Shown one piece after another: positions 41,131 through 64,000 of a DNA stretch of 64,000 nucleotides; position 1 is the stretch's first letter, and the number at the start of each line of letters is the position of its first letter. The notes under the pieces were generated by a model. The model was given only the letters and a program-made list of their open reading frames with translations, ran no database searches and was not told the DNA's origin. The position numbers were made by a program, and so were the translations under genes. The DNA comes from Heteronotia binoei (lineage: Eukaryota): assembly GCF_032191835.1 (NCBI RefSeq), contig NC_083223.1, forward strand, positions 249,612,001 through 249,676,000, in the 5' to 3' direction.

Positions 41131-41149
41131 GGGTCTGGGTAAAAGTCGG

Positions 41150-44100
41150 ATCTACACGGATCTTCATGAATTCATATGATTTTTACATTGAAATGAAATC
41201 AAACCACTTTAATCCTGTAGATTCTGTCTTAGACTATAGGCAGGACCACAAAAATCATGCCTCCACGAATTCGTGGCGCCTCAGCAGTGCAAAAACTGGC
41301 TTCCAAAGCACGGATCCTCATGAATTCATATGATTTTTATGGTGAAATGAAATCAAACCACCATCATGTTGTAGATCCTCTCTTAGACTATAGGCAGCAA
41401 CAGAAAAATCATGCCTCCACGAATTGGTGGCGCCACAGCACTGAAAAAACATGTTTCCAAACCACGGATCCTCATGGATCCTCACGATTTTTGCCTTGGG
41501 CCACCACAAGATAACCAGCCAATCACATATCATGTCCATGGGCAGATGTTGGACCACAGAAATCATGGATCCACGGCTTCGTGGCAGCACCAGGGACCAA
41601 AAACTTACTTTTGGACCACGGATCCTCATGGATCCATGTGATTTTTGCTTCGGATCCCCCCAAGCCCTCCATCCAGTCACATATCATGTCCATGGGCAGA
41701 GTTTACACCACAGAAATCATGGATCCACGGCTTCGTGGCAGCGCCAGGGACCAAAAACTTGCTTTTGGACCACGGATCCTCATGGATCCACGTGATTTTT
41801 GCCTTGGATCCCCCCAAGCCATCCATCCAGTCATATATCATGTCCATGGGCACAGTTTACACCACAGAAATCATGGATCCACGGCTTCGTGGCAGCACCA
41901 GGGACCAAAAACTTGCTTTTGGACCACGGATCCTCATGGATCCACGTGATTTTTGCCTTGGATCCCCCCAAGCCGTCCATCCAGTCATATACCATGTCCA
42001 TGGGCACAGTTTACACCACAGAAATCATGGATCCACGGCTTCGTGGCAGCGCCAGGGACAAAAAACTTGCTTTTGGACCACGGATCCTCATGGATCCACA
42101 TGATTTTTGCCTTGGATCCCCCCAAGCCATCCATCCAGTCATATATCATGTCCATGGGCACAGTTTACACCACAGGAATCATGGATCCACGGCTTTGTGG
42201 CAGCACCAGGGACCAAAAACTTGCTTTTGGACCACGGATCCTCATGGATCCACATGATTTTTGCCTTGGATCCCCCCAAGCCATCCATCCAGTCATATAT
42301 CATGTCCATGGGCACAGTTTACACCACAGAAATCATGGATCCACGGCTTCGTGGCAGCACCAGGGACCAAAAACTTGCTTTTGGACCACGGATCCTCATG
42401 GATCCACGTGATTTTTGCCTTGGATCCCCCCAAGCCCTCCATACAGTCACATATCATGTCCATGGGCACAGTTTACACCACAGAAATCATGGATCCACGG
42501 CTTCGTGGCATCTCCAGAAATCAAAAACTTGGTTATAAACCACGGATCCTCATGGATCCACGTGATTTCTGCTTCGAACCCCCCAAGCCCTCCATACAGT
42601 CACATATCATGTCCATGGGCACAGTTTACACCACAGAAATCATGGATCCATGGCTTCGTGGCAGCTCCAGAAATCAAAAACTTGGTTATAAACCACGGAT
42701 CCTCATGGATCCACGTGATTTCTGCTTCAGACCCCCCAAGCTCTCCATACAGTCACATATCATGTCCATGGGCACAGTTTACACCACAGAAATAATGGAT
42801 CCACGGCTTCGTGGCAGCGCCAGGGACCAAAAACTTGCTTTTGGACCACGGATCCTCATGGATCCACGTGATTTTTGCCTTGGATCCCCCCAAGCCATCC
42901 ATCCAGTCATATATCATGTCCATGGGCACAGTTTACACCACAGAAATCATGGATCCACGGCTTCGTGGCAGCGCCAGAAATCAAAAACTTGGTTATAAAC
43001 CACGGATCCTCATGGATCCACGTGATTTCTGCTTCGGACCCCCCAAGCCCTCCATACAGTCACATATCATGTCCATGGGCACAGTTTACACCACAGAAAT
43101 CATGGATCCACGGCTTCGTGGCATCGCCAGAAATCAAAAACTTGCTTTTGGACCACGGATCCTCATGGATCCACATGATTTTTGCCTTGGATCCCCCCAA
43201 GCCATCCATCCAGTCACATATCATGTCCATGGGCACAGTTTACACCACAGAAATCATGGATCCACGGCTTCGTGGCATCTCCAGAAATAAAAAACTTGGT
43301 TATAAACCACGGATCCTCATGGATCCACGTGATTTCTGCTTCGAACCCCCCAAGCCCTCCATACAGTCACATATCATGTCCATTGGCACAGTTTACACCA
43401 CAGAAATCATGGATCCACGGCTTCGTGGCAGCTCCAGAAATCAAAAACTTTGTTATAAACCACGGATCCTCATGGATCCACGTGATTTCTGCTTCAGACC
43501 CCCCAAGCTCTCCATACAGTCACATATCATGTCCATGGGCACAGTTTACACCACAGAAATAATGGATCCACGGCTTCGTGGCAGCGCCAGGGACCAAAAA
43601 CTTGCTTTTGGACCACGGATCCTCATGGATGCACATGATTTTTGCCTTGGATCCCCCCAAGCCATCCATCCAGTCATATATCATGTCCATGGGCACAGTT
43701 TACACCACAGAAATCATGGATCCACGGCTTCGTGGCAGCGCCAGAAATCAAAAACTTGGTTATAAACCACGGATCCTCATGGATCCACGTGATTTCAACT
43801 TCGGACCCCCCAAGCCCTCCATACAGTCACATATCATGTCCATGGGCACAGTTTACACCACAGAAATCATGGATCCACGGCTTCGTGGCAGCGCCATAAA
43901 TCAAAAACTTGGTTATAAACCACGGATCCTCATGGATCCACATGATTTCTGCTTCGGACCCCCCAAGCCCTCCATACAGTCACATATCATGTCCATGGGC
44001 ACAGTTTACACCACAGAAATCATGGATCCACGGCTTCGTGGCATCTCCAGAAATCAAAAACTTGGTTATAAACCACGGATCCTCATGGATCCACGTGATT

Positions 44101-46600
44101 TCTGCTTCGAACCCCCCAAGCCCTCCATACAGTCACATATCATGTCCATGGGCACAGTTTACACCACAGAAATCATGGATCCACGGCTTCGTGGCAGCTC
44201 CAGAAATCAAAAACTTGGTTATAAACCACGGATCCTCATGGATCCACGTGATTTCTGCTTCAGACCCCCCAAGCTCTCCATACAGTCACATATCATGTCC
44301 ATGGGCACAGTTTACACCACAGAAATCATGGATCCACGGCTTCGTGGCAGCTCCAGAAATCAAAAACTTGGTTATAAACCACGGATCCTCATGGATCCAC
44401 ATGATTTTTGCCTTGGATCCCCCCAAGCCATCCATCCAGTCGTATATCATGTCCATGGGCACAGTTTACACCACAGAAATCATGGATCCACGGCTTCGTG
44501 GCAGCGCCAGAAATCAAAAACTTGGTTATAAACCACGGATCCTCATGGATCCACGTGATTTCTGCTTCGGACCCCCCAAGCCCTCCATACAGTCACATAT
44601 CATGTCCATGGGCACAGTTTACACCACAGAAATCATGGATCCACGGCTTCGTGGCAGCTCCAGAAATCAAAAACTTGGTTATAAACCACGGATCCTCATG
44701 GATCCACGTGATTTCTGCTTCGGACCCCCCAAGCCCTCCATACAGTCACATATCATGTCCATGGGCACAGTTTACACCACAGAAATCATGGATCCACGGC
44801 TTCGTGGCAGCTCCAGAAATCAAAAACTTGGTTATAAACCACGGATCCTCATGGATCCACGTGATTTCTGCTTCGGACCCCCCAAGCCCTCCATACAGTC
44901 ACATATCATGTCCATGGGCACAGTTTACACCACAGAAATCATGGATCCACGGCTTCGTGGCAGCTCCAGAAATCAAAAACTTGGTTATAAACCACGGATC
45001 CTCATGGATCCACGTGATTTCTGCTTCAGACTCCCCAAGCTCTCCATACAGTCACATATCATGTCCATGGGCACAGTTTACACCACAGAAATCATGGATC
45101 CACGGCTTCGTGGCAGCTCCAGAAATCAAAAACGTGCTTTTGGACCACGGATCCTCATGGATCCACATGATTTTTGCCTTGGATCCCCCCAAGCCATCCA
45201 TCCAGTCATATATCATGTCCATGGGCACAGTTTACACCGCAGAAATCATGGATCCACGGCTTCGTGGCAGCATCAGGGACCAAAAACTTGCTTTTGGACC
45301 ACGGATCCTCATGGATCCACGTGATTTCTGCTTCGGATCCCCCCAAGCCCTCCATACAGTCACATATCATGTCCATGGGCACAGTTTACACCACAGAAAT
45401 CATGGATCCACGGCTTCGTGGCAGCTCCAGAAATCAAAAACTTGGTTATAAACCACGGATCCTCATGGATCCACGTGATTTCTGCTTCGGACCCCCCAAG
45501 CCCTCCATACAGTCACATATCATGTCCATGGGCACAGTTTACACCACAGAAATCATGGATCCACGGCTTCGTGGCAGCTCCAGAAATCAAAAACTTGGTT
45601 ATAAACCACGGATCCTCATGGATCCACGTGATTTCTGCTTCAGACTCCCCAAGCTCTCCATACAGTCACATATCATGTCCATGGGCACAGTTTACACCAC
45701 AGAAATCATGGATCCACGGCTTCGTGGCAGCTCCAGAAATCAAAAACGTGCTTTTGGACCACGGATCCTCATGGATCCACATGATTTTTGCCTTGGATCC
45801 CCCCAAGCCATCCATCCAGTCATATATCATGTCCATGGGCACAGTTTACACCGCAGAAATCATGGATCCACGGCTTCATGGCAGCATCAGGGACCAAAAA
45901 CTTGCTTTTGGACCACGGATCCTCATGGATCCACGTGATTTCTGCTTCGGATCCCCCCAAGCCCTCAATCCAATCACATATCATGTCCATGGGCAGAGTT
46001 TGCACCACAGAAATCATGGATCCACGGCTTCGTGGCAGCATCAGGGACCAAAAACTTGCTTTTGGACCACGGATCCTCATGGATCCACGTGATTTCTCCT
46101 TCGGATCCCCCCAAGCACTCCATACAGCCACATGTCATGTCCATGAGCACAGTTTGCACTAAAGAAATCTTGGATCCACGGTTTCGTGGCAGCGCCAGGA
46201 AACAAAAACTTGGTTTTGAACCGCGGATCCTCATGCATCCACATGATTTCTGCTTCGGATCCCCCCGAACCCTCAATTGAATCACATATCATGTCTATGA
46301 GCAGAGTCTGCCGCACAGATATCGTGGCTCCACGGCTTCGTGGCAGCACCAGGGACCAAAAACTTGCTTTTGGACCACGGATCCTCATGGATCCATGTGA
46401 TTTTTGCTTCGGAACCCCCCAAGCCCTCAATGTAATCACATATCATGTCCAATGGCAGAGCATCTACCACAAAAATCATGGCTCCACAGCTTCGTGGCAG
46501 CACCATGGAACAAAAACTTGGTATTGGACCACGGATCCTCATGGATCCACATGATTTCTGCGTTGCATTCCACCATGATTTTTGGCAGACCTTGCACCAC
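41150..46600 (+). repeat. Left arm: about 35 tandem 153/154-bp satellite units (degenerate at both ends, fading to about 46980)
   Basis: Unit approx. CCACGGATCCTCATGGATCCACGTGATTTCTGCTTCGGACCCCCCAAGCCCTCCATACAGTCACATATCATGTCCATGGGCACAGTTTACACCACAGAAATCATGGATCCACGGCTTCGTGGCAGCTCCAGAAATCAAAAACTTGGTTATAAA. ORF-track offsets are 154 (41795, 41949, 42103, 42257, 42411), and 51-aa (153-nt) in-frame repeats also occur. Confidence 0.98.
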
Positions 46601-47314
46601 AGAAATGACAGGTCCATGGCTTTGTGCCGGTACCAAGGAGCCAAAATATGGTTTCGAAGTGCAGATCCTTCTTGATCTTAAAGTTATTCGCGTTGGGTCA
46701 AGGAAAACTCGACTTTATACCACATGTAATATCCATGGTCATAGCTTGCTGAACAACTATCACACATTCACATTTTTATTGTTCACCACACTCATTATCC
46801 ATCCAGATGTCACGTCTATGTCCAGCGTTTGCAAACTACAAATTGGATTTCGAGTACCTTGTATGCTGTCACGGTGTGCTTACATACTTTGAAACACTTA
46901 ATCTTCATGAATTCTGTGACTTTTCATTTTTGAATAGTTGGGCTCATCATGCGTGGTCCGCCTGAGGTTTCTTTCACATCACACAGCACGTCCATGACCA
47001 CAGAATAACCCACGAAAACCTCAGAACACTGCCAAGATGCCAAACACTGCTTCAAATACTTTGTGGCTTGTGCATTATGACATCACACCAATGTCTACAG
47101 GGTGACCAAACAAAAAAGTATCTGTAATGGTTCTACCTTACCATGAACACCACAGTAACATGAGAAATCAAAATAATGTCCATACCTTTCACTGCAAATA
47201 ACTGCATTCTGAACTTTCAGATGCCACCGAGTTGCAAAACTATCCAGATATTGTAATGGTCTTATCTTTGACTTCAAAACATCTTGCTCACTAGACAGAG
47301 GCCACCAAATTAGA

Positions 47315-47745
47315 ATAATGGAATCATAGAGTTGGAAGGGACCTCCAGGGTCATCTAGTCCAACCAACCCCCTGCACAATGCAGGAAACTCAGAAACACC
47401 TCCTCCTAAATTCACAGGATCTTCATTGCTGTCAGATGGCCATCTAGCCTCTGTTTAAACACCTCCAAGGAAGGAGAGCCCACTACCTCCCGAGGAGGAA
47501 GCCTGTTCCACTGAGAAATTGCTAACGGTCAGGAAGTTCTTCCTGATGTTGAGCTGAAACCACTTTTGATTCAATCTCAACCAGTTCTGGTTCTGGTCCT
47601 ACCTTCCGGGGCCACAGAAAACAATTCCACGCCATCTTCCATATGACAACCTTTCAAGTACTTGAAGATGGTGATCATATCACCTCTCAGCCGCCTCCTC
47701 TCCAGGCTAAACATGCCCAGCTCCTTCAACCTTTCTTCATAGGAC
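47315..47745 (-). mobile_element. CR1 LINE 3' fragment
   Basis: Reverse complement encodes EERLKELGMFSLERRRLRGDMITIFKYLKGCH and ends in an attctatgattc tail. Confidence 0.88.
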
Positions 47746-47914
47746 TTTTCATTAATAATTATTTTCATTAATAATGAAAAGCTGTCATCTCTCTTACATT
47801 AATTCAACTGTAAATGGTTTAAGGGGGACATTTTGTTATTTAGGGGTGAGTTTGTCTTGTACTCATTAACATAGGTGCAATCACAACTGTTTATGGTCAA
47901 CAGATTTTTTTAAT

Positions 47915-48265
47915 GTTGTTCAGTCGCACAGTCGAGTCCGACTCTTTGCGACCGACCTCATGGACAAAGTCACGCCAGGCCCTCCTGTCTTCCACCATCT
48001 TCCGAAGTCTGCTCAAATTCGTGTTTGTTACATCAGTAACGCTCTCCAGCCATCTCATCTTTTGCCGTCCCCTTCTTCTTTTGCCTTCTGTCTTTCCCAG
48101 CATCAGGGTCTTCTCCAGGGAGCACTCCCTTCTCATTTGGTGGCCAAAGGATTTGAGTTTCAGCTTCAGCATCTGACCTTCCAGGGAATAGTATGGGTTG
48201 ATTTCCCTTTCGACTGACTGACTGGATCTTCTTGCAGTCCAAGGGACTCTCAAGAGTCTTCCTTA
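47915..48265 (-). mobile_element. RTE-BovB LINE 3' fragment
   Basis: Reverse complement encodes SLEGQMLKLKLKSFGHQMRRECSLEKTLMLGKTEGKRRRGRQKMRWLESVT, the RTE/BovB ORF C-terminus. Confidence 0.9.
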
Positions 48266-48677
48266 ATGCAGCCTTCTAAAGCAGGAGTCTCCAAACTAGT
48301 GATGCCTATAGGTGCCATGGTGCCCAGGAGCACCTTTCCTGGTAACAGTGGAGTGTTTTTCTTTAAAATCAGGTGGCAAACTGTGCCCAGCTTGGCTTTT
48401 GATTGGTTGTTGTACATTTGATTGACTGTGTGGATTTTGGTAGATGTCGCTTTGGCAGCAGCTGCCTCCAACAGTACAAGGATATTCTCTGTGTGACTGA
48501 AGGTAAAACGTGGCACCCATTCTTTTGCTGGCTTTGCCCCTGCAGCAGTTGTTTTGTGACAGCTGTTTTATTGGTTGCAGCCACCATGCTGTGTCATGAT
48601 TCCAAAGATGAAGAAAGGCTTAGGGAAGTCGCACACCCTTGTTCTACATGCTGTACTCTTGGCTCGCCAGGTCATGC

Positions 48678-48880
48678 AAAGCCAGTATGGTGTAGTGGTT
48701 GGAATATTACATTAGGATCTAGTAAACCTAGGTTCAAATCCTGACTGCCATGGAAGCTTGCTGTGTGACCTCAGGACAGTCATGCACTCTCTGCCTAACC
48801 CACCTTGCAGGGTTTCTGTGAGCATAAAATTGGAGGACAGGAGAATGATGTCAGCCCCTTTGCTTTCATTGTGGAGAAAA
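48678..48880 (+). mobile_element. Old MIR-like tRNA SINE
   Basis: 'gccagtatggtgtagtggttgg..ggttcaaatcc..gtgtgacctcagg..cccaccttgcagggtttctgtgagcataaa'. Confidence 0.65.
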
Positions 48881-49689
48881 ATGATACATACACGAAGCCA
48901 GCAAACAAAGGTAGTTTTGGAGACTAATGGAATGAGATGCAAAAGGAGAATCCATCCCTGAGTCCTCCCATATACATGTGGAATGTGGGGTGTGGCTGGG
49001 CCTTTTCCCTCATCAAATTGGAGAGCATATGACTGAGGACAGAAGTGTTGTCATGCATATGTTATATGTATCTTGATGGGACACCTTGAGAGTGAAACAG
49101 GGTCAGTGGCAACGGGTTGACTTTTTTCCATACATCACTTGCCTGCTCAGAATTAAAACTTATTGAGTCTTCTTTTAATTAGAATAAAAACATAGTGACT
49201 TTGCATAATCTGTGGTTTTCCCATGAAAGAGCAAGCTGTGCACTGCCTTCTATGCCTGAGGGCAAAAGAGCTTCATAGGTTGGTTTCTGAAACGAGACTA
49301 GAGATTTCAAGGCCTGCTCTGTTGTGTGATATTCTGATGAATCCCTCTCTCTCCCATTAGCTTAACCAGGATTGGATGATGTTCCCGAATCACCATACTT
49401 TTCCTTACAGATATTCAGACTGGAGTACAGCTACCTATTCTTTAACTTAGTGCTTTTGGGAAGTGTACAGAAATGACAGCTGCTCTTGCGTGAGCTCTCT
49501 GGATGTAAGTGGGGGCAGAATATAAGGATCATGCTATAGTTACATAAAAACAGTTTTGTGGATGGCTGGCCTATTTATAGTTCCTATTTACAGTTCTGGG
49601 TTTTATTTTCAAAGTCTCAAACAACTGCAGGATGCTTTTCTGAACCTAGTTGCATATTCATTATAGCATGGGGGAGACTTATCTTTGCA

Positions 49690-50395
49690 GTACTATGTAT
49701 GAAACCAATCTAGGGAGCTTTGTGGACCACACGCTGAACATGAGTCAGCTGTGTGATGTGGCAGCCAAAAAGGCAAACACAATTTTGGGCTGCATCACCA
49801 AAAACCAAGTGTTCGCATCATGTTCAGTGATTGTGTCACTTTACTCTGCTGTGGTTAGGACCCTACTAGACTGCTGCGTTCAGTTTGGGGCACCACAGGT
49901 TAATAAGGAAATATGTCCAGAGGAGGGCAATGGAGATTATGAGGGACATGGAGACCAAGTCCTATGAGGAAAGATTGAAGGAGCTCGGTCTGTTTAGCTT
50001 GGAGAGGAGACAACTGTGAGGTGATATGATCACCATCTTCAAGTACTTGAAGGAATGTCCTATAGAGAATGGTGCCGTTGCCCCAGGATGTTGGACCAGA
50101 AACAGCAGGTTTAAATTAAATCAGAAGAGTGTCTGGGTAAACATTAGGAAGAGCTTCCTGACAGAGCAGTTCCTTAGGCTTAGGGGAACAGGCTTCCTCT
50201 TGAGGTGGTGGGCTTTCCTTCCTTGGAGGTTTTCAAACAGAGGCTAGATGGCCATCTATGGCAATGAGGATCCTGTGAACTCAGACAAATCATGAAAAGA
50301 AGGGCAGGGGAGATACCTGTGAACTCCCAGCATGGTTAAGGGGGGTGGATGAGATCAACCTTGAGGTCCCTTCAAACACTATGATTCCACGAGTC
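49690..50395 (+). mobile_element. CR1 LINE ORF2 3' fragment
   Basis: LNMSQLCDVAAKKANTILGCI...LYSAVVR..L..CVQFGAP...EERLKELGLFSLERR..MITIFKYLK, with frameshifts. Confidence 0.88.
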
Positions 50396-51382
50396 TGTGA
50401 TCTGTTTGGAAGAGGGCAGAGGGCAAACAATACAACTATGGGGTTGGTGTGCCTTTTATGTGACCAAAAGCAACAGAGTCTGTGAATGTTAAGTCTACAG
50501 AAAGGATTGATGAGGGGGGACATGAGAACACTTTGTGAAATGATGTATGAGGTAAAATAGTAGATAATCCCACCCCCAGCCCCCCCAACCCCATGGGTAA
50601 AACTATTGCTTAAAATGTGGAATATACTGCAAAAGCAACATCTTTAAAAATCTCCACAGCTACTCAAAACTCCAGTATCCTGATAGAAGCCTTGCTGGGA
50701 AAAAAGCCATACCTGGCCCCACCCACTCTCCAGGAACAAATGACCGGTGCCAGGAAAAGTGTTGGCAGCCACCATGGCATGCCCAGGCACCACTATTGCG
50801 AACTTTTGGCTAACCACGTGCCTCATTTTTTCTGATCATGTGAACTTACACTGTGTAATTTGCCTTGAGTTTCAGGGAGAAAAAAGGACTAAGCAGAAAG
50901 TAAACAAAGATATATATATTCTATGCTTGTTGGCCCTTGTGAGAGAGGATGATGGACCAGTATATTTATCTAGCTATGCTCAGTTTATGTTCCTCCCATA
51001 TCCTTCTCCGTTACCCCTTCCACTGGAAATATTGTGGGTGCCTATACAGAACAGCCTTCTCAACAGTGGAACCCAGTCTCTTCAACTCTCTCTCAAATGA
51101 AGTTTGCATCAATCCCTAACGCCCTCCTGGAGTGCTCAGTTGATTCAAGGAGGTTGGTTGTGTTTGTTGTCATTTGATAATTTTTGATGCTGACTTGGAT
51201 TGATCGTTAGTTGCTTTAGGGATTATGTGAAGTTGAAAGATTACATATTACCACGTTGACAATGATAGTAAAGCATGTAATGGTTCAATATGAGAACATT
51301 AGTTTTGTTAAGGCTCCTGCTCTATTTGAGGTGCAACAACAACAGCTCTGCTTGCATATCTGAGTGGATCTAGTCTTCTTAC

Positions 51383-51901
51383 TAGGGTTGCCAGGGCCAA
51401 CTCAAGAGATGGCTGGGAACTTTGGGGGTGGAGCCAGGAGACTTTGGGGGTGGAGCCGGGAGCAAGGTTGTGACAAGGATACTTGAACTCTGAAAGGTAA
51501 TTTCCGCCACTGCATTAAAAGGTACTGCACACCTTTTAAATGCCTTCCCTCCATTTGGAAATAATGAAGGATAGGGGCACCTTCTTTTGGAGCTCATTGG
51601 ATTGGAGCCCCTGGTCCAATGCTTTTGAAACTTGGATGGGTTTTTGAAGAGAGGAAACGGATGCTGAAAATTTGCTGCCTCTACATCAAAAAACAGCCCT
51701 CCCCAAAGCCCAAAATACCCACAGATCAATTCTCTATTATACCCTATGGGAATCGATCTCCATAGGGGATAATGAAGTCCCCAAGAGACATTTATTTCCC
51801 CCTCCCTGCCCCCCCCTGCTTTCTGATGACCCTGAAGTGGGGGGAGGGCCTCCAAACTGGGGGATCTCTTTCCCCCCCCCCCCCCGGGATTGGCAATCCT
51901 A
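51383..51901. mobile_element. hAT-type MITE with 8-bp TSD
   Basis: TIRs TAGGGTTGCCA and TGGCAATCCTA. TSD CTTCTTAC (51375-51382) versus CTTGTTAC (51902-51909). Confidence 0.85.
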
Positions 51902-52130
51902 CTTGTTACTATGGAAAGTGAAACTAGTGAAGCTTTAGTGAACTGTCTCTTTAAGGGGGCTGAGATTTGGGTGGAGCTCAGTTTAAGGAGCCAGGTCTTC
52001 AGAATCCAAGCTGGAGGTGCAGAACTGGTGAGAGATATACTTTCAGTCTATTTCCAAAGTGTGTGCAAGGAGGCAGATTCAGTTTATGTGACAGGCTTCC
52101 AAAACTCTTTGGAAAGGGGAAATCTTCAGG

Positions 52131-55100: not shown

Positions 55101-55268
55101 CAGTGCTTTCTGAAGGAGGGTTGCATGAAGCCCAGCAGTGACTTGACCATGGTTTACTGTGAAGGAAAATGCAAGGACTGGTACCACTGCTTTTGCATAG
55201 GCATGGACTCCAAAAATCTACCACAAATTTTCATGTGTCCAGACTGTCAATCCACAATGGCCAAATAG
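52131..55268 (+). CDS. Mutator/MULE-family transposase-like protein, 1045 aa: CG-1-like + MULE DDE + SWIM + Ulp1 protease + PHD
   Basis: Single open ORF. MULE motifs: SYD254TTF, VSD319REKGI.KAL, C340WNH343 and TTNVSE435SFH..LK. SWIM: C576-C578-C584-H586. Ulp1/C48: WINDRII, H821W, D838S, Q883..DC889G. PHD: C992/C998/C1010/C1014/H1019/C1022/C1036/C1039. Confidence 0.9.
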   Translation: MVLYCKRSNPFTVEEALHILTHPDYQKTITNPPCKPQGGDVFLYSFSGSPHKKDDWRCDQYSWINCGVRLWPKKDPKLRKFYHKIKGGSSTGNFVRHSYTLLELSCEIVLLHYIGDEKEFKPLPHGNRKKNLKRSHVRTMPSVIGRITDHNAKPSKIYQDLCNKPVTDSTSIPVSQPRNLEQIRNKLKFERQRTRVSHDDVYSIIEFTELLEGFIHDYSLYPAVIVLMGLPDILSEIGKVLLLKTELPMLFSYDTTFQLGDFYLSTLIFQNVLFTESPLIPVMFMIHDSKHEENHRRFFENLSKQCPSLNSEKVVMVSDREKGICKALDRVLLKIHRVLCWNHIRRDIMFWLKKHGAKSVDTKIYLTDFFDLLRSNSEEEYTVKLEKLSRKWSRAFVDYFDEELHPAIISHAGAWILKRLNIYNEKSGITTNVSESFHAALKRLAQWKEMSMEAMVLALYAMQNFYWREILRGLCNTGNLHLRSQFLRHSRSPEHTIFPHIACDPSEIMDLVQRGELPRPKKDEIYEKDPSVCQVVLADFTVLSNLTATCPQLGVFVVRGVKDKNYVVSLFPKESCSCPSSRTCYHIIAAKKTIGMPPVPGKPRRLQLTQLKRNKRQKTRSGRKFPRLQENVTVAAAVDSMQTATELDSLKADHLLTMTHLESTQPQMTSTPKGVPEKLTVVTIDSLDNSPTFSVHSEKCADTSETYKSVPPWHNCTFKILSLQKRGLVASVANICVYDYDIDTLRGSKWINDRIIDAFLASRVIMAKEMGHDGTIFTLSCHFIQTLLCRRLSVQTLKYCLKYGVLQKDVLIIPVNDRQVHWILIVIIFKWKTMLYLDSKHGLNHSVIEAITSFLCCLYEMDLKCSYSFADWSFFAPTDIPWQDNSSDCGPFTCSIAHVIASATQLNFTQEDMTAVRPWIAKEIIQYSGKTYLERKDKYIPLEIAVVTYKEREILKESGITVSRSCPEGWNDTLKYCADILPSLFQGRWSQCFLKEGCMKPSSDLTMVYCEGKCKDWYHCFCIGMDSKNLPQIFMCPDCQSTMAK

Positions 55269-56154
55269 AGTTTGAAATTGTTACACAGGTAGGTAACACA
55301 TACCAAATAAATTATGTGAACAGGTAAATCCACACACATGGTCTTCAGCATCATAGCTGAGCTGACCCCTTTCAGTGTATCTTGTATTTATGGAGAGTTT
55401 ACCTGATTTTCAAAATTCATTTCGGGGGAATTATGGTGCAGTGTTCCATGGTAGAGGGGATTCTAAAGTGCTACAGTGAAACTTCCTAATACCAGTTTTC
55501 TTTGTGACTAATGAGGCAATGTAGAAACACCAAGTTACATCCTTCTATGCATGATCACGAGTGCAACCTTTCCTACTGGAGTTCTGCTTGTGCACCCGAG
55601 AGATATACTACACCACACACAGAAAGTCTGCAGGTTCTCCCCCCTTAAAGAACAGCTGGCAATCACTTTGTACAATGTCTAGCTCCAGTGGAAATGTCAG
55701 TCAGGATGCAAGGGTCAGCATGGTCCGGTTAGTAACACCACAAGTGTTCGGGCTCCAGCACATGTGGAAATCAGCTGGATCCAACCTCTGGTTTTGAAGT
55801 AATATTATGAGTGTTCTGGAGATGCAGGGAGGCAGATAAACTGTAAAGGGTAAGAGGAAGGATCATACCTTGACTCCAACTCCTGTGCTATCAGCGTGTG
55901 TGTTGATCAGAGCCAGTGCACCCTGCAGGTGCACCTAGTGTTAGTGCATGGGTTACATCCATGCCTTGGAGAACTCTGGAAAGCACAGAGGCTGGATGGT
56001 TTGGAGAGAGCCCATGCACATATCCATTATACATGTTTAGGCATTGTTCAATAGTAAAGCCAAAAATATCTTTAGGATTAAAGCCCTAATCTCCACAGAT
56101 GACACTGAGTGGCATGAGGAATAAAACAAATGCTGGCCCTCTTTTCTGTAATTG

Positions 56155-56432
56155 GAGAGCCAGTTTGGTGTAGTGGTTAAGTGTGCGGACTCTTACCTGG
56201 GAGAACCGGGTTTGATTCCCCACTCCTCCACTTGCACCTGCTAGCATGGCCTTGGGTCAGCCAGAGCTCTGGCAGAGGTTGTCCTTGACAGGGCAGCTGC
56301 TGTGAGAGCCCTCTCCAGCCCCACCCACCTCACAGGGTGTCTGTTGTGGGGGAGGAAGGTAAAGGAGATTGTGAGCCGCTCTGAGACTCTTTGGAGTGGA
56401 GGGCGGGATATAAATCCGATATCTTCTTCTAA
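56155..56432 (+). mobile_element. MIR/Ther1-like SINE (Squam3-type), near full length
   Basis: gagagccagtttggtgtagtggttaagtgtgcggactc...gggcgggatataaatccgatatcttcttct. Confidence 0.88.
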
Positions 56433-56608
56433 TTGCAAAATGAAATAACATTCTAGATTCAGCATCTGATAATAGACAAGTAGTTCTACTGCTAGAAAAA
56501 GAAATCAATTTGACAACTTTGCTGCAATAATCTTAGAAATTTGTGGGACTTTCTTCCAATTAAAGGTTTACAGGCTCTTAATGCAGAAGACAAATCATGA
56601 CTCGTTTC

Positions 56609-56790
56609 CAGGGCTTTTTTTTTAAAAGCAGGAACTCCTTTGCATATTAGGCTACACACTCCTGATGTAGCCAATCCTGCAAGAGCTTAGAGGGCTCTTA
56701 GTATAGGTCATTCTGTAAGCTTTAGGAGGATTGGATACATCAGGGGTGTATTGCCTAATATGCAAAGGAGTTTCTGCTAAAAAAAAACAA
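56609..56790. mobile_element. Palindromic MITE
   Basis: gcaggaactcctttgcatattagg..tgatgtagccaatcct is mirrored by aggattggatacatca..cctaatatgcaaaggagtttctgc. Confidence 0.75.
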
Positions 56791-57524
56791 ACTCTGCTTG
56801 GTTCCATTACAATCACAATTTTAAATGTTAGTACTGAAGCAGTGCTCATGAGTTTGAGTTCGTGACTTAAGCTTTGACTGAACAAGATGCTGTGTGATTT
56901 CCTATCTTGCTTTTCAAATGTCACTATGATTCAGCAGCACTTTGAAAATGCAGTATGGAGATATATTACTGAGCAGATGGGAAGCAGGTCAATAACTTCC
57001 CATAACATCTTGGTATGGATTCCCACATAAGGGACAGAAAACTTTTAGGGGCCACATTTTTTTTGAAGTACGGAGACAGCACGGTATCTATGAAAAATGT
57101 GAAGCAAGTTCGTGAATTCATCCCCATAGAAATAATAATTTGTGGTGTTAAGGTTGGTGATGAGCAGGACCCTTTCCCATTTTCCCACACACAAGAACAC
57201 AGAGTTTGCTCTTAATGGGATTGAACAAGCAGAGTTTCTGTGGTCAGAGTTCCTGCACAAGACATCAGCAAAGTGCCTTTGAAAAAACTCAGCTTCTCAA
57301 ATGCATCATGAATCTTCCACTTGTGAACGTTGGAGTTGGAAGGCATAGAAGGTGCTGGTACTCACCTCCCTCCTCACAACCCCAGCCCCAGTGGTATCAA
57401 GGCATGTTTCTAGAGAAAGATGACAGTCATGATTATGACTATTACATATTATTTTTAATAATAATATAAATGAAGATGATAATCATCATCATTATTTAAT
57501 ATTATTATTTATTTATAGATGGTA

Positions 57525-57810
57525 TGACCTGAATCAGTGGGTTGAAATTAAACCAGAATAGTTTCTGGCTCAACATTAGGAAGAACTTCCTGACCATTAG
57601 AGCAGTTCCTCAGTGGAGCAGGCTTCCTCAGGAGGTGGTGGCCTCTGCTTCCCTAGAGGTTTTTAAACAGAGGCTGGATGGCCCTCTGACAGCAATAAAG
57701 ATCCTGTGAATTTAGTGGGGAGGTATTTGTGAGTTTCCTGCATTGTGCAGGGGGCTGGACTAGATGACCCTAGAGGTCCCTTCCAATGCTATGGTTCTAT
57801 GATTCTGTTA
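57525..57810 (+). mobile_element. CR1 LINE 3' end
   Basis: ggctcaacattaggaagaacttcctgacc...ggaggttttaaacagaggctggatggcc...ggactagatgacc...gtcccttcc..ctatggttctatgattct. Confidence 0.85.
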
Positions 57811-57887
57811 TTTACTGTAAGGCAGAGTCACAGACAGGAGGTATATACCAATATAAGAAGTGTAAACCAGAAGATACAATCGGGTAT

Positions 57888-58084
57888 GCAGCGATGTTCC
57901 CTCTAAGTTGCAGTCTTGTGAGCAAAACTTCTACTTTAAGAGCTACTGGTATTAAAGTTATGAGCTACTGCATATATTATTGTGCTCTGCGGCTATTTTT
58001 CCTAAGCCAAGACAGAAATGTGTGAGCTGGAGGCTAAAAATCTGTGAACTAGCTCATGCTAACTCTGCTTAGAGGGAACACTGG
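57888..58084. mobile_element. MITE (CAGCGATGTTCCCTCTAAG / CTTAGAGGGAACACTG termini)
   Basis: Terminal inverted repeats are visible by eye. Confidence 0.7.
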
Positions 58085-59977
58085 TATGCAGACTGCTTGA
58101 CCAATCCCCTGAATACCAACTTCTAGATTAACAATCCACTCAGGTGTGACTGAGGAGGATTCAAACAGCACCATCATGATTGATGTAACTCCCCTAACAC
58201 TCATCCCTAACTCCTATGGTCTAAATGAATGGGTCATGGAATTGCCCAAGTGTGGCTTGATGATGCTTCTAACCTGGGGTGAGGGAATCATCCATCCCTG
58301 TAGCAAACTGCATGTAGAACATGATTTTGTACAGAGTGCAGAACCACTTCTTCTCACAAGCAACCAAGGTGAGCCACTGAGGCACTGGCTGCAGCACTAG
58401 AGCAGGCAGTGTGGTTTGAACACCAGGTGGAGGTCAGAAGGATGTAACTCTTTCTGAGTCCTCGTTGGGGAGAAAGGGGGGCTATCAGTGAAGTAAAGGT
58501 CTCTCAGAGCAACAGAGCTGCCAGCTGGGACTGAGGGAAGCCCACTGAGGACCTTGCTCAATTCCACTGTGCTTTGGCTCGCTCCCTGAGTGTACAGCCA
58601 CTTTTGTCTCCCCGGCTGCACACCTTTAGAATAGTAGCACAGTAAAACCTTTACTAGAAGATGTGGGTGGGTGTCACTTAGGCCCAAAACATATCTTAGC
58701 CCCCCCTCAAGGAATCACCTTTTCAGTTGTAAACCTCTCCTTGATGCTACAGTGACTGCACCTTTATGAACAGTTATTTCTATAATAGACTCCCAACTGT
58801 AGATGGTTTGGGGGGAGCACCCACATGATCTTATGGTCTAAGCATGATGTCATTGTCCTTTACCTGCCCTCATTGTGCTCTTACCCTAATCTGCGAAAGT
58901 GATGGCCAACTGATGTTTCTGCTGTCCTGCTTTTAATGTTACTGCCACAACAGCAGCCTGAACAACTTAAGTGCCTTTCCCAGTTTTCAATGCAAGGTCA
59001 ATAATGTGCAGATAAAATAATTTTCTAATCATTAATGTTATGAAGCATCTCATGAAAAGATTAAACAACTCTCTGGAATATAAAGAAGGAATGAGAAATG
59101 TGAATTCAGCATATAATCCTGTTTATTACACTTTCAGGTCTCCATATAATCATGTGAACAGAAACCTCAGAAGGCTGTGTGATGCTGGTGGCACATTGCA
59201 AGATGACCAAAGCAAAAACAAGAGTTGTGCATATTTGATCTTTTGAAGTGTTACAGAAATATTCAAACCTTAGTTTTCTGATATCCATCACAAGTTCTGA
59301 TTGTCTCAGTTCTCTCCTCCTCCAAGTGCACTGTTCTAGTGCAACCCATTTGTTCTTATTATTAACAAAACTGTATATAAAGGTGTCAAAGTTAAAGTTT
59401 AAAGATTCAGCTTTAATACTGTGTCTCTCTTTGTATCCTTTCAGCGAGAATGCTTAAAACTGTTGCCAAGGAATACAGGTGGTCTCTGTGTATTGTGAAA
59501 AATTCCCAAATTAAAGTATAGATGGGTATGGACAACCATCTAGTCCATAATCTGCTTTCACACAGTGGCCATACAACTACACTGTGTGCCCAACAAATGC
59601 AGTAGAGACACAAAGTTCTGTACCTGGTACTGCCTCTTGGCACTGGGTTTCAAAGGTTTCTTGGCTCTGTATATGAAAGTTCCCTTCATTTAAATTGGCT
59701 AGTAGCCACTTATAGATCTCTTCCATGTCCCCTTTTGAAGCCTTCTTTGCCCGTGGATATCAGTCAATCCTCAGGTGGTGAAATCCATGGTTATGTCAGT
59801 CATGGAGTAAATTGGTGCTTCTTTAAGTTGGGTGCCCCTGAGTTCAGTATTACGGCAGGGGGAGGAACAGTTATCTCTATCCACTTTCTACACTCCATGT
59901 ATAACTTTAAATCCTCAATCATGTCTGCCCCCGCTTAGTTAAAGTTTTCATAGACTGAACATTTTCAAGACTCTTCA

Positions 59978-60678
59978 GCCAGTTTGCTGTAGTGATTGAT
60001 TGCATGGACTCTTATCTGGGAGAACTGGATTTGATTCCCCACTCCTCCACTTGCACCAGCTGGAATGGTCTTGGGTCAGCCAGAGCTCTGGCAGAGGTTG
60101 TCCTTAAAAGGGCAGCTGCTGTGAGAGCCCTCTCCAGCCCCACCCACCTCACAGGGTGTCTGTTGTGGGGGAGGAAGGGAAAGGAGATTGTAGGCCACTC
60201 TGAGCCTCTGTCCTTGAAAGGGCAGCTGCTGTGAGAGCCCTCTCAGCCCCACCCACCTCACAGGGTGTCTTTTGTGGGGGACGAAAGTGAAGGAGATTGT
60301 AGGCCGCTCTGAGCCTCTGTCCTTGAAAGGGCAGCTGCTGTGAGAGCCTTCTCAACCCCACCCACCTCACAGGGTGTCTGTTGTGGGGGAGGAAGGGAAA
60401 AGAGATTGTAGGCTGCTCTGAGTCTCTGTCTTTGAAAGGGCAGCTGCTGTGAGAGCCCTCTCTAGCCCCACTCACCTCACCAGGTGTCTGTTGTGGGGGA
60501 GGAAGGGAAAGGAGATTGTAGGCCGCTATGAGCCTCTGTCCTTGAAAGGGCAGCTGCTGTGAGAGCTCTTTCAGCACCACCCACCTCACAGAGTGTCTGT
60601 TGTGGGGGAGGAAGATAAAGGAGAATGTGAGCCGCTCTTAGGCTTTGAGATTCAGAGTGGAGGGTGGGATATGAATCA
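59978..60678 (+). mobile_element. Squam3-type SINE with its 3' body amplified five times in tandem (about 110-bp unit)
   Basis: ggcagctgctgtgagagcc recurs at 60111, 60221, 60330, 60439 and 60549. Confidence 0.92.
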
Positions 60679-60795
60679 AAGTCACTGCTGGGCTTCATGC
60701 AACCCTCCTTCAGAAAGCACTGTAAGCAGCGGCCCTGAAACGAAGAAGGCAAAATATCAGTACAATACTTAAGTATGTCATTCCATCCCTCTGGA
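60679..60795 (-). pseudogene. Inverted 117-bp fragment of the transposase 3' region
   Basis: Reverse complement aligns ungapped to 55028-55144 with 8 mismatches by hand count (PEGWND.LKYC.DILPS.FQGR..QCFLKEGCMKPSSD). Confidence 0.93.
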
Positions 60796-61395
60796 ATTGT
60801 TTTCTGTGGCCCCAGAAGGTGGGACCAGAACCAATGGGTTGAAATTAAATTAAAAGAGTTTCCAGCTTTGAGTGTGGTGGACCAGATGGAGTTCATGGCC
60901 CTTTCCTACTCTGTGGATCTGTAACTGGTTGACAGATCGCACCCAAAGAGTGGTTGTGAATGGTTCCTCATCCTCTTAGAGAGGAGTGACAACAAGTGGA
61001 GTGCCTCAAGGATCTGTCCTGGGACCTGTTTTGTTCAATATCTTTACCAATCAAAGTTTTCAGGTTTTCACGGCTGGTAACATCATTAGGGTTTGTAGAA
61101 TCTTTCGGGCTCAAGTGCTGTGTTCTACTGGAGAAAGTTTTCCTTACAGCTCAACATTAGGAAGAACTTCCTGACCGTTAGAGCGGTTCCTCAGTGGAAT
61201 AGACTTCCTCCTCGGGAGGTGGTGGGCTCTCCTTCCCTGGAGGTTTTTCAACAGAGGCTAGATGGGCATCTGACAGCAATGAAGATCCTGTGAATTTTGG
61301 GGAAGGTGTTTGTGAGTTTCCTGCATTGTGCAGGGAGTTGGACTAGATGACCTGGAGGTCCCTTCCAACTCTATGATTCTATACAATTCTATGAT
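60790..61395 (+). mobile_element. Patchwork of CR1 fragments (post-RT piece, RT piece, 3' end)
   Basis: gaattgttttctgtggccccagaagg (60790-60860), then SGVPQGSVLGPVLFNIF (about 60990-61050), then a 3' end with ctatgattcta tail (61135-61395). The pieces are not in native order. Confidence 0.8.
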
Positions 61396-61407
61396 TTTAG
61401 TGTAGAA

Positions 61408-61543
61408 CAGGGGTGGTCAACGGTAGTTCTCCAGAAGTTTTTTGCCTACAACTCCCATCAGCCCAGCAAGCATGGCTGATGGCTGGGGCTGATGGGAGTT
61501 GTAGGCAAAAAACTTCTGGAGAGCTATCGTTGGCCCCCCCCTG
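61408..61543. mobile_element. Palindromic hAT-type MITE (same family as 9464-9583)
   Basis: CAGGGGTGGTCAAC...GTTGGCCCCCCCCTG. 8-bp TSD GTGTAGAA at 61400-61407 and 61544-61551. Confidence 0.88.
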
Positions 61544-61619
61544 GTGTAGAATGTCAGTTTGGGGACACTGCTAAACCAGGAATAAAGGTCTACTGTGAAA
61601 TTGTTTTCCAACATTCCTA

Positions 61620-64000
61620 TCTTCTCATAAGAGGACCCATGAGGATCCGTGCCGCAAAATCATGTTCTGGATCCATGGTGCTGCCACGAAACCATGGATC
61701 CATTATATCTGTGGAGCAAGCTCTTTCCATGGACGCAGCATGAGATTGGATGGTGAGCTTGGGATGAGCCAATGCAGATATCATGAGGATCCATGAGTAT
61801 ATGTGCTTCAAAGCCATGTTTTCGCTCCATGATGTTGCCACGATGCCAAGGATCTATGATTTCCGGGGTGTAAACTCATGAGGATCCATGGTGCAAAACC
61901 AAGTTCTTCTTCCATGGTGCTGCCACGAAGCCGTGGATCCATGATTTCTGTGGTAGAAGCTCTGCCCATTGACATGATATGCGATTGTATGGTGAGGTTG
62001 GGGGGATCCGAGGCAAAATTAATGAGGATTCTGGAGGATCCGTGGTCCAATACTACATTTTTGGTCTCTGGCGCTGCCACGAAGCCGTGGATCCACGATT
62101 TCTGTGGTGAAAGCTGTACCCATGGACATGATATGTGATTGGATAGTGAGCTTGGGGTGGCCCAAAGTAAAAGTCAGGAGGATTCATGAGGATCCGTGGT
62201 CCAAAAGCAAGTTTTTGGTCCCTGGCGTTGCCACGAAGCTGTGAATCCACGATTTCTGTGCTGCAAACTCTGCCCATGGCATGATATGTGAATGGATGGA
62301 GGGCTTGGGGGGATCCAAAGCAAAAATTATGTGGAACCATGAGGATCCGTGGTCCAAAACCAAGTTTTTGCTCTTTGGCGCTTCCACAAAGCTGTGTATC
62401 TATGATTTCTGTGGTGCAAGCTCTACCCATGGATATGATATGTGATTAAATAGTGAGCTTGGGGTGGCCCAAAGTAAAAATCATGAGGATTCATGAGGAT
62501 CCGTGATTCAAAACCAAGTTTTTGGTCCCTGGCGCTGCCACGAAACCGTGGATCCACGATTTCTGTGGTGTAAACTGTGCCCATGGGCATGATATGTGAC
62601 TGTATGGCGGGCTTGGGGGGTCCGAAGCAGAAATCACGTGGATCCATGAGGATCCGTGGTTTATAACCAAGTTTTTGATTTCTGGAGATGCCACGAAGCC
62701 GTGGATCCATGATTTCTGTGGTGTAAACTGTGCCCATGGACATGATATACGACTGGATGGATGGCTTGGGGGGATCCAAGGCAAAAATCATGTGGATCCA
62801 TGAGGATCCGTGGTCCAAAAGCAAGTTTTTGATTTCTGGCGCTGCCACGAAGCCGTGGATCCATGATTTCTGTGGTGTAAACTGTGCCCATGAACATGAT
62901 ATATGACTGGATGGACGGCTTGGGGGGATCCAAGGCAAAAATCATGTGGATCCATGAGGATCCGTGGTCCAAAAGCAAGTTTTTGGTCGCTGCGCTGCCA
63001 CGAAGCCATGGATCCATGATTTCTGTGGTGTAAGCTGTGCCTATGGACATAATATATGACTGGATGGATGGCTTGGGGGGATCCAAGGCAAAAATCATGT
63101 GGATCCATGAGGATCCGTGGTCCAAAAGCAAGTTTTTGGTCCCTGGCGATGCCACGAAGCCGTGGATCCATGATTTCTGTGGTGTAAACTGTGCCCATGG
63201 ACATGATATGTGACTGTATGGAGAGCTTGGGGGGTCTGAAGCAGAAATCACGTGGATCCATGAGGATCCGTGGTTTATAACCAAGTTTTTGATTTCTGGA
63301 GCTGCCACGAAGCCGTGGATCCATGATTTCTGTGGTGTAAACTGTGCCCATGGACATGATATGTGACTGTATGGAGGGCTTGGGGGGTCCGAAGCAGAAA
63401 TCACATGGATCCATGAGGATCCGTGGTTTATAACCAAGTTTTTGATTTCTGGAGCTGCCACGAAGCCGTGGATCCATGATTTCTGTGTTGTAGACTCTGC
63501 TCATGGACATGATACGTGATTCGATTGAGGGCTTGGGAGGATCTGAAGCAGAAATCATGTGGATCCATGAGGATCCGTGATTCAAAACCAAGTTTTTGGT
63601 CCCTGGCGCTGCCATGAAACCATGGAGCCATGATTTCTGTGGTGTAAACTGTGCCCATGGACATGATATGTGGCTGTATGGAGGACTTGGGGGGATCCGA
63701 AGCAGAAATCACATGGATCCATGAGGATCCGTGGTCCAAAAGCAAGTTTTTGGTCCCTGGCGCTGCCACGAAGCCATGGATCCATGATTTCTGTGGTGTA
63801 AACTGTGCCCATGAACATGATATATGACTGGATGGACGGCTTGGGGGGATCCAAGGCAAAAATCATGTGGATCCATGAGGATCCGTGGTCCAAAAGCAAG
63901 TTTTTGGTCGCTGCGCTGCCACGAAGCCATGGATCCATGATTTCTGTGGTGTAAGCTGTGCCTATGGACATAATATATGACTGGATGGATGGCTTGGGGG
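61620..64000 (-). repeat. Right arm: at least 15 units of the same 153/154-bp satellite, inverted, continuing past the window end
   Basis: Reverse complement of the left-arm unit (ggatccatgaggatccgtgg...ccacgaagccgtggatccatgatttctgtggtgtaaactgtgcccatgg). Degenerate at the inner end (61620-62560). Confidence 0.98.

What the first reader, a model, noticed from the sequence alone, without database searches (positions are those of the whole stretch)
41131..64000. Giant Foldback-like Mutator element whose terminal inverted repeats are satellite arrays
Seen: about 35 copies of a 153/154-bp unit on plus (41150-46600), the same unit on minus from about 61620 to the window end, and an intact MULE-type transposase ORF in the roughly 15-kb interior. 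Known: Drosophila Foldback and some Mutator-superfamily elements (for example the Phantom group) have long TIRs built from tandem subrepeats. Inference: this is one DNA transposon of more than 22.8 kb whose TIRs have expanded into multi-kb satellite arrays. I know of no described element like this in a squamate or other amniote, where MULEs are mostly non-autonomous fossils. It could also be a vehicle that seeds satellite DNA at new loci.
Basis: partly seen in the sequence, partly recalled or inferred. Interest (0 to 1): 0.92.

Follow-up and report, generated by a model that had tools for sequence, protein, structure and literature searches.

The report
Lizard foldback transposon with satellite arms
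This stretch of lizard DNA looks like one very large cut-and-paste transposon: an intact Mutator-type transposase gene sits between two opposed multi-kilobase arrays of a 154-bp repeat, a design known from beetles and flies but which I found unreported in reptiles.

Summary
A 154-bp repeat forms a 5.9-kb array on the plus strand (41131-47021). The same repeat lies on the minus strand from 61630 to the window end. Between the arrays is an intact 1045-aa ORF (52131-55268) with MULE DDE, SWIM, Ulp1/C48 and PHD parts.

- **Second species:** in the lizard Elgaria, a 59%-identical intact ORF at an unrelated locus is flanked by homologous repeat units. They are plus-strand upstream and minus-strand downstream (E down to 4e-14; no hit in controls).
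- **Left end:** the outer edge is sharp. Its 19-bp tip matches 12 of 19 bases of the terminus of a complete related MULE that has 9-bp duplications.
- **No other ends:** the ORF has no inverted repeats of its own nearby.
- **Selection and copy number:** dN/dS against Elgaria is 0.195. Reads show about 1-2 copies per genome.
- **Age:** at least eight nested repeat insertions swell the interior, so this copy is old and may no longer move as a whole.

The closest known kind is Rehavkus/Foldback-type Mutator elements; Tribolium has arms over 11 kb. Earlier notes of this scan report non-coding 154-bp foldback copies elsewhere in this genome. This window adds the candidate transposase.

The parts
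41131..41154 (+). Left terminus (tip) of the element; 9 bp before it (41122-41130, GTATTATAC) is the predicted target-site copy
   Evidence: The tip is unique in the window. The unit HMM finds nothing upstream of 41155. 12 of 19 bases match the terminus of the complete MULE L002.
41155..41460 (+). Two outer variant 154-bp units (86% alike; about 67% to the main unit)
41461..46565 (+). Main left array, about 33 units of 153/154 bp, many 98-100% identical; 460-bp higher-order period
46566..47021 (+). Degenerate inner units of the left arm
   Evidence: HMM hits 46573-46771 (E 4e-25) and 46790-47021 (E 3e-4)
47022..52130 (.). Upstream spacer, mostly nested repeats: 275-bp SINE-like copies at 47312-47629 and 49957-50359; a 2.4-kb piece bounded by 116-bp inverted repeats at 47632-50072; a ~10-copy repeat at 50360-50930; a ~10^4-copy repeat at 51383-51930
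52131..55268 (+). Intact single-exon transposase ORF, 1045 aa: N-terminal DNA-binding-like domain, MULE DDE core with CWNH, SWIM CxCx5CxH, Ulp1/C48 protease (H821, C889), C-terminal PHD finger
55269..61629 (.). Downstream spacer with nested repeats: SINE at 56155-56416; palindromic element at 56609-56796; SINE-like at 57526-57806; SINE plus its 109-bp tandem expansion at 59966-60677; SINE-like at 60792-60867 and 61144-61382; palindromic element at 61408-61547
60679..60795 (-). Inverted 117-bp fragment of the ORF 3' end (equals 55028-55144, 93% nt, 79% aa): remnant of a second copy or of aberrant repair
61630..64000 (-). Right arm: the same 154-bp unit on the minus strand. Inner units are degenerate (61630-62521) and outer ones 88-96% like the left reference unit. 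At least 15 units; the arm runs off the window.

Best explanation
This is a Foldback-type member of the Mutator (MULE) superfamily, architecturally like Rehavkus elements. It has a left terminus at 41131, a 5.9-kb left arm of about 38 tandem 154-bp units, and a central region encoding an intact MULE-SWIM-Ulp1-PHD transposase. A right arm of the same units in inverted orientation continues past the window.

Inferred mechanism: the transposase binds repeated motifs inside the units (conserved cores such as ATCATGGATCC and GATCCTCATG..TGATTTTT). It then pairs the two arms and cuts and pastes the element, making a 9-bp target duplication. The arms grow and homogenise by unequal exchange, which turns subterminal binding-site repeats into kb-scale satellite arrays. 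Arm-only derivatives would be moved in trans.

This copy has since taken up at least eight nested SINE or other insertions. It is therefore probably too large and too old to move itself, but it can still supply the transposase.

Shown here: the anatomy, the domain content, purifying selection, low copy number, and the ORF-unit association in a second species. Inferred only: binding, the 9-bp TSD at this copy, and present-day activity.
For: 1. Arms and orientation.
2. Second species: in Elgaria locus L001 the 59%-identical intact ORF (10001-13129) has homologous units on the plus strand at 8945-9617 (E 4e-14 to 1e-10). It also has units on the minus strand at 16234-16837 (E 1e-5 to 5e-4). The same HMM gives no hit below E 0.35 in 55 kb of the window outside the arms or in seven unrelated loci, and none below E 3 in 0.93 Mb of shuffled L001.
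3. Different genomic contexts: the ORF copies of four squamates sit next to different genes. These are CCDC87/RBM4 here, PRY-SPRY in Elgaria, a zinc-finger array in Phrynocephalus, and an IL27B-like gene in Podarcis.
4. No other TIR pair flanks the ORF within 47.6-60.1 kb.
5. Termini: the outer edge is sharp and the inner edge decays. The tip shares 12 of 19 bases, anchored at the end, with the terminus of L002. L002 is a complete 6.8-kb MULE with 205-bp TIRs and the 9-bp TSD TCCCGATGC, and its transposase is 37% identical to this ORF (p about 5e-4 to 3e-3).
6. ORF state: dN/dS 0.195 and dS 1.42 against Elgaria, with all domains constrained. The DDE/CWNH, SWIM and C48 His/Cys residues are conserved.
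7. Copy number: whole-genome reads of the same species label give a summed depth of about 3 on the ORF, as on unique flanks. A few reads carry 3-12 differences.
8. Precedent: Rehavkus elements have a MULE-related transposase with a PHD finger, 9-bp TSDs, and satDNA units of 164 bp in inverted termini, with arms over 11 kb (PMC6446971, PMC10218199, PMC12581902).
9. Leads from this scan, not checked by me: non-coding foldback copies built of the 154-bp unit with matching termini and 9-bp TSDs elsewhere in this genome.
Against: - The right terminus and TSD are outside the window, so a single bounded insertion is not demonstrated.
- The two arms differ in higher-order structure (460 bp against 307 bp periods). 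Their degenerate inner units are alike only at the general unit level, about 65%.
- The interior carries many nested repeats yet the ORF is untouched and open. That fits selection at this locus and so also fits domestication.
- In Elgaria neither the tip motif nor a TSD could be found.
- The Podarcis fragment has no units within 10 kb. In Phrynocephalus the only units lie 9.7 kb downstream on the plus strand, which is the wrong orientation for a right arm.
- The tip-to-L002 match is modest, and the shared pattern was derived from the two sequences themselves.
- No RNA data were available.
Confidence: 0.68

Rival explanations
1. Domesticated gene with relic arms. The ORF is a host gene derived from such a transposon and is kept by selection for a cellular role, as FAR1/FHY3 or ZSWIM genes are. 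The flanking arrays are immobile relics of its former termini that expanded in place.
For: The ORF is at about 1-2 copies. dN/dS is 0.195 over a dS of 1.42. The ORF is intact despite at least eight nested insertions around it. The Elgaria copy is annotated as an ordinary gene and its arms are degenerate, 60-77% between arms. The best structural matches include the domesticated FAR1/FRS and ZSWIM9 proteins.
Against: The copies in four squamates lie in four different gene neighbourhoods, and two of them are broken. That is the pattern of a mobile family, not of an ortholog. Arm units here reach 98-100% identity, which means recent turnover. Notes of this scan report arm-only copies with TSDs, which need a transposase source. 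The catalytic DDE/CWNH motif is retained.
Confidence: 0.14
2. Chance or composite juxtaposition. The two arrays belong to separate elements, or to one satellite block split by an inversion, and the transposase gene merely lies between them.
For: The right end is unseen. The arms have different higher-order periods and no shared unique inner domain. The family is said to have hundreds of ends in this genome, so two arms could lie 15 kb apart by chance. An inverted ORF fragment at 60679-60795 shows that rearrangement has happened here.
Against: The same plus-units / ORF / minus-units order recurs around the Elgaria ORF, with the left arm ending 380 bp before the ATG. Both inner edges decay gradually, whereas an inversion breakpoint inside an array would be abrupt. 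No unit occurs elsewhere in 55 kb of the window. The ORF has no other termini.
Confidence: 0.13
3. Assembly artefact. The inverted arrangement of the arrays is a mis-join in a repeat-rich region.
For: Satellite arrays are prone to mis-assembly, and I could not lay reads on the arrays or their junctions.
Against: There are no gaps in the window. Independent short reads cover the ORF and its unique flanks at even single-copy depth. The edges of both arms decay gradually into unique sequence. The same architecture is seen in another species' assembly.
Confidence: 0.03

Closest known systems
Rehavkus DNA transposons (MULE superfamily; e.g. Rehavkus-1_TC of Tribolium castaneum, and the TfSat06 elements of T. 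freemani)
   Same: Both have a MULE-related transposase with a PHD finger. Both have inverted termini made of a short TIR plus tandem satDNA units of similar size (164 bp there, 154 bp here). Arms can reach over 11 kb, and the repeats evolve in concert and can seed satellites (PMC6446971, PMC10218199, PMC12581902).
   Different: The host is a squamate, not an arthropod or annelid. This protein also carries a Ulp1/C48 protease and a SWIM finger. Sequence kinship to a Rehavkus transposase was not tested because no sequence was available. The 9-bp TSD is not seen at this copy.
Drosophila Foldback / FB-NOF and Tetris
   Same: Both have long inverted arms of tandem repeats, a mostly non-coding family with rare coding copies, and arm repeats that spawn satellite arrays (Tetris TIR-220, PMC4079207). 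The NOF protein is a structural match (Foldseek E 2.4e-11). The top Atlas cluster is auto-named after it.
   Different: Identity to NOF is only 9%, and it ranks behind the plant FAR1 proteins. FB units are 10-31 bp. No autonomous Tetris copy is known.
Tm1 (Mutator/Foldback family of root-knot nematodes)
   Same: TIRs are built of variable numbers of tandem units, the TSD is 9 bp, the transposase is Phantom/MULE-like, and non-autonomous copies are in the majority (PMC3169594).
   Different: Tm1 units are 14 bp, its arms are under 200 bp, its elements are 1-3 kb, and its protein is 496 aa without C48 or PHD.
Plant KI-MULEs (MULE transposase with Ulp1 protease)
   Same: A MULE DDE domain and a C48/Ulp1 protease lie in one element (established knowledge; Pfam).
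   Different: They are a plant lineage with ordinary TIRs and no satellite arms. No sequence comparison was made here.

Membership tests
Mutator-like (MULE) superfamily | DDE transposase of MULE type with the C/DxxH motif | tested here: met
   Pfam MULE scores 28.8 bits against a 27.6 cutoff. D261, D319/E321 and CWNH 340-343 are invariant in a 7-sequence family alignment. Foldseek matches the FAR1/FRS MULE-derived proteins at E 2e-13.
Mutator-like (MULE) superfamily | 8-11-bp target-site duplication | not testable with these tools
   The right end lies beyond base 64000. The related complete element L002 has a 9-bp TSD. Notes of this scan report 9-bp TSDs for arm-only copies; I did not check these.
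Mutator-like (MULE) superfamily | Terminal inverted repeats | tested here: inconclusive
   The arms are inverted arrays of one unit. The left tip is defined, but the right tip is outside the window.
Rehavkus | PHD finger in the transposase | tested here: met
   Pfam PHD at 998-1039, E 8e-4, is below the cutoff. The Cys/His pattern is conserved in full-length relatives whose precomputed Pfam includes PHD.
Rehavkus | Inverted termini containing tandem (mini)satellite repeats | tested here: met
Rehavkus | Transposase clusters with Rehavkus sequences in a tree | not tested
The named hits were squamate, caecilian, Hydra and mite proteins.
Drosophila FB-NOF | Transposase homologous to the NOF 120.7-kDa protein | tested here: inconclusive
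   Foldseek E 2.4e-11 but only 9% identity, at rank 12. The Atlas cluster name is automatic.
Domesticated MULE-derived host gene (FAR1/ZSWIM type) | Orthologous, syntenic single-copy gene across species with loss of termini | tested here: not met
   Four species show four gene neighbourhoods, two copies are broken, and the arms are retained here and in Elgaria. The flanks examined were limited to 10 kb in the other species.

The most novel reading that the evidence does not exclude
The ORF is the live autonomous transposase of a currently mobile Foldback/MULE family in a squamate. It would drive the reported hundreds of 154-bp arm-only copies. That would make it the first functional Mutator-superfamily transposon shown in an amniote, and a working system in which a transposon's binding-site repeats grow into, and disperse, kilobase satellite DNA.
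Probability: 0.35. Interest if true: 0.82.

Novelty: new member of a known kind. Interest (0 to 1): 0.66.

Why it matters
A 2019 survey of Mutator elements could not confirm any vertebrate MULE. It listed their apparent absence from vertebrates as an open question (PMC6446971).

This window holds an intact, selection-constrained MULE-type transposase still sitting inside its arms. Relatives occur in at least four squamate lineages and in caecilians. The repeat unit of the arms is recognisable across a synonymous divergence of 1.4, which argues that the units are functional cis-sites rather than passive satellite.

The element therefore gives a concrete protein and a concrete DNA target for testing two things: how foldback transposons are mobilised, and how transposon termini turn into satellite arrays in a vertebrate genome. 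The element also begins about 2.6 kb upstream of the first coding exon of an RBM4-like gene, so it may matter for that gene's regulation.

Tried and rejected
- **Short TIRs near the ORF:** I searched for a conventional pair between 47.6 and 60.1 kb and found none.
- **Unique inner domain:** none is mirrored next to both arms. Only SINE-like copies and unit-level similarity of about 65% were found.
- **Elgaria ends:** the tip motif and a 7-10-bp TSD at the Elgaria arm edges were not found.
- **Outer variant units:** I tested whether they are closer to the Elgaria units than the main unit is. There is no clear difference.
- **Phrynocephalus locus:** the ORF is 5'-truncated and broken near residue 645. 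Units occur only at 20699-20942, on the plus strand at the locus end, which is ambiguous.
- **Podarcis locus:** a frameshifted 3' fragment (82% nt) has no units within 10 kb.
- **Distant relatives L003-L009:** no clear termini were found. Some have tandem arrays near the ORF (L006: 16-bp and 41-bp; L008: about 164-bp, 8 kb upstream), but these are not inverted pairs.
- **Exact-protein look-up of the ORF:** not on record.
- **Sequencing runs holding the ORF:** none was listed. A second query on the tip region gave whole-genome reads of the same species label.
- **Findings search by sequence:** blank.
- **Kinship to Drosophila NOF:** only a distant structural match.
- **Microcaecilia locus:** no DNA was served.
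- **Reads on the tip or arrays:** not attempted. Reads were laid on the ORF region.
Full report
**Observation.** Tandem Repeats Finder finds a 154-bp array at 41445-46561 on the plus strand (33.3 copies, 92% matches, 460-bp higher-order period). Two diverged units precede it at 41155-41476. The same unit lies on the other strand at 61877-64000, with more degenerate units from 61638. I cut the arrays into 34 left and 14 right monomers. Many left units are 98-100% identical to one another. Several right units are 98-99% identical to particular left subtypes, so both arrays draw on one homogenising pool.

A profile HMM of the unit shows that the left array has a sharp outer edge, with nothing upstream of 41155. 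Inward it decays gradually to 46771 (E 4e-25) and perhaps to 47021. The right array also decays at its inner edge, starting at 61630. No unit is found elsewhere in the window. GGATCC occurs 19 times per kb in both arms and 0.2 per kb elsewhere. The window has no N.

**The gene.** ORF 52131-55268 (+) is open for 1045 codons. Pfam gives Peptidase_C48 (1.9e-18) and MULE (1.7e-6, above the gathering score). It also gives weak CG-1 (residues 12-114) and weak PHD (998-1039).

- In an alignment with six full-length relatives the MULE signature residues are invariant. These include D261, D319, E321 and the CWNH motif. The SWIM CxCx5CxH (576-586) and the protease His821 and Cys889 are invariant too.
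- An AlphaFold model built on 50 relatives has mean pLDDT 80.
- Foldseek against Swiss-Prot returns the MULE-derived FAR1/FRS proteins, SENP/Ulp1 proteases and ZSWIM9. It also returns the Drosophila NOF protein of FB-NOF at E 2.4e-11, but with only 9% identity.
- The family is large. There are 279 cluster representatives at E<=1e-30. Named members come from caecilians, Phrynocephalus, Elgaria, Podarcis, Hydra and a mite.

**Is the gene tied to the arrays?** Within the window the interior is not a mirrored structure. Its internal repeats are as follows:

- four copies of a 275-bp SINE-like element;
- a 235-bp SINE whose 3' part has expanded into a 109-bp tandem;
- two palindromic elements;
- a 117-bp inverted fragment of the ORF's own 3' end.

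No short TIR pair flanks the ORF.

The decisive evidence came from another species. The only close full-length homolog is Elgaria multicarinata LOC134396010 (1042 aa, 59% identity). Nucleotide similarity between its locus L001 and the window is confined to the ORF. Yet the unit HMM hits L001 on the plus strand at 8945-9617 (E 4e-14 to 1e-10), ending 380 bp before the ATG. It also hits the minus strand at 16234-16837 (E 1e-5 to 5e-4), 3.1 kb after the stop. Direct alignment confirms both the inverted similarity of the two Elgaria arms and their similarity to the window's terminal units. Cores such as GATCCTCATG..TGATTTTT and AAAAATCATGGATCC are conserved.

The controls are clean. Shuffled L001 (0.93 Mb) gives no hit below E 3. 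Seven unrelated loci and 55 kb of the window give none below E 0.35. So the order plus-units / ORF / minus-units is shared by two lizards whose ORFs differ by dS 1.42.

**Mobile family or ortholog?** The window's left part carries a CCDC87 ORF and RBM4-like exons. The Elgaria copy abuts a PRY/SPRY gene. The Phrynocephalus copy, 5'-truncated and broken, lies by a zinc-finger array. The Podarcis copy, a frameshifted 3' fragment, lies near an IL27B-like gene. Four species show four contexts, and two of the copies are decayed. That is the pattern of a transposon family rather than of a conserved host gene. The flanks examined were only 10 kb, so the test is limited.

**Terminus.** The metagenomic contig L002 encodes a transposase 37% identical to this ORF. 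It is a complete 6.8-kb MULE with 205-bp TIRs and a perfect 9-bp duplication, TCCCGATGC. Its terminal 19 bases share 12 positions with the window's tip when both are anchored at the end. The derived pattern occurs only at those three places among the window and the loci held at that point. The chance of 12 or more matches in 19 is about 5e-4 to 3e-3. This is modest, partly post hoc support that 41131 is a true transposon end of this transposase family.

**Selection and copy number.** Against Elgaria, dN/dS is 0.195 overall and between 0.10 and 0.30 in every domain. I laid whole-genome reads of the same species label on 50330-56329.

- Summed depth is about 3 on the ORF and on the unique flanks.
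- Depth is about 10 times that on 50360-50930, about 10^4 times on 51383-51930, and about 10^5 times on the SINE from 56155.
- A few ORF reads carry 3-12 differences, so at least one diverged partial paralog exists.
- A related organism's contigs cover the ORF at about 87-90% identity.

The ORF is therefore present at about one to two copies per genome.

**Reading.** The simplest account is a Foldback-type MULE whose subterminal repeats have expanded into kb-scale arrays. This copy has been bloated by at least eight nested insertions. Most of the 5.1-kb upstream spacer is secondary repeat, which leaves an original spacer of the order of the 380 bp seen in Elgaria. This copy may be too large to move, but it encodes what looks like a competent transposase.

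Notes of this scan report arm-only 154-bp foldback copies with matching termini and 9-bp duplications elsewhere in the genome. I could not check them. If they hold, this ORF is the natural source of their transposase.

**What remains open.** The right tip and TSD lie outside the window. The arms have different higher-order periods. An intact ORF inside an old, insertion-riddled copy also fits domestication. I give the transposon reading 0.68, domestication with relic arms 0.14, chance or composite juxtaposition 0.13, and assembly artefact 0.03.

**Comparison with known systems.** The architecture is already described. Rehavkus elements are MULE-related, with a PHD finger and a 9-bp TSD. They carry satDNA units of 164 bp in their inverted termini, and in Tribolium freemani such arms exceed 11 kb (PMC6446971, PMC10218199, PMC12581902). 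Tm1 in nematodes and FB/Tetris in Drosophila are further parallels.

What is new is the host. A 2019 survey could not confirm any vertebrate MULE, and my literature searches found no squamate foldback or MULE description. Also new are the survival of an intact coding copy and the conservation of the arm unit across squamates. I therefore class it as a new member of a known kind.

Noticed in passing
window 24018-26624 (+): Intact 868-aa single-exon ORF with no Pfam hit. The Atlas places it with coiled-coil domain-containing protein 87 (CCDC87) at score 0.97.
   Followed up: partly
window 37972-38517 (-), 33532-34212 (-), 5586-7040 (-): Exon-like ORFs with two RRMs, a CCHC knuckle and a further RRM. 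The first matches RBM4/RBM4B clusters (0.96). Together with CCDC87 this looks like the conserved CCDC87-RBM4/RBM14 neighbourhood. The element starts about 2.6 kb upstream of the RBM4-like first coding exon.
   Followed up: partly
window 59966-60677 (also 56155-56416, 20159-20433, 31135-31362): A SINE with about 10^5 genomic copies whose 3' 109-bp part has expanded locally into a 4.9-copy tandem array. This is a small-scale case of a repeat tail turning into a satellite.
   Followed up: partly
window 47312-47629, 49957-50359, 57526-57806, 61144-61382: Four copies of a 275-bp SINE-like repeat lie inside the 14.6-kb interior, and none in the 41 kb to the left. This is either an insertion preference for the element or chance.
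   Followed up: no
window 51383-51930: A very high-copy repeat (read depth about 10^4 times single copy) with a variable 22-bp internal tandem. It sits only 200 bp upstream of the transposase ATG and may affect the promoter.
   Followed up: no
window 61408-61547 and 9460-9583; 56609-56796: Palindromic MITE-like elements with arms 82-93% complementary and loops of about 20 bp.
   Followed up: no
L002 1-7061: A metagenomic contig holds a complete 6.8-kb MULE with 205-bp TIRs containing GCGGAACGG-type subrepeats and the 9-bp TSD TCCCGATGC. It encodes a 688-aa transposase and a separate OTU-protease ORF, a parallel to the Ulp1 fusion here.
   Followed up: partly
L006 588-791 and 5906-6229; L008 787-2196: Distant full-length relatives (30% and 25% identity) also have tandem arrays near the ORF: 16-bp and 41-bp units in L006, and 153-172-bp units 8 kb upstream in L008. 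No inverted pairing was seen within the DNA held.
   Followed up: partly
P0004 (Geotrypetes seraphini): A 518-aa caecilian protein that is 43% identical to the transposase N-terminal half is annotated as mitochondrial tyrosine-tRNA ligase isoform X1. This is probably a transposon-gene chimera or a mis-annotation.
   Followed up: no
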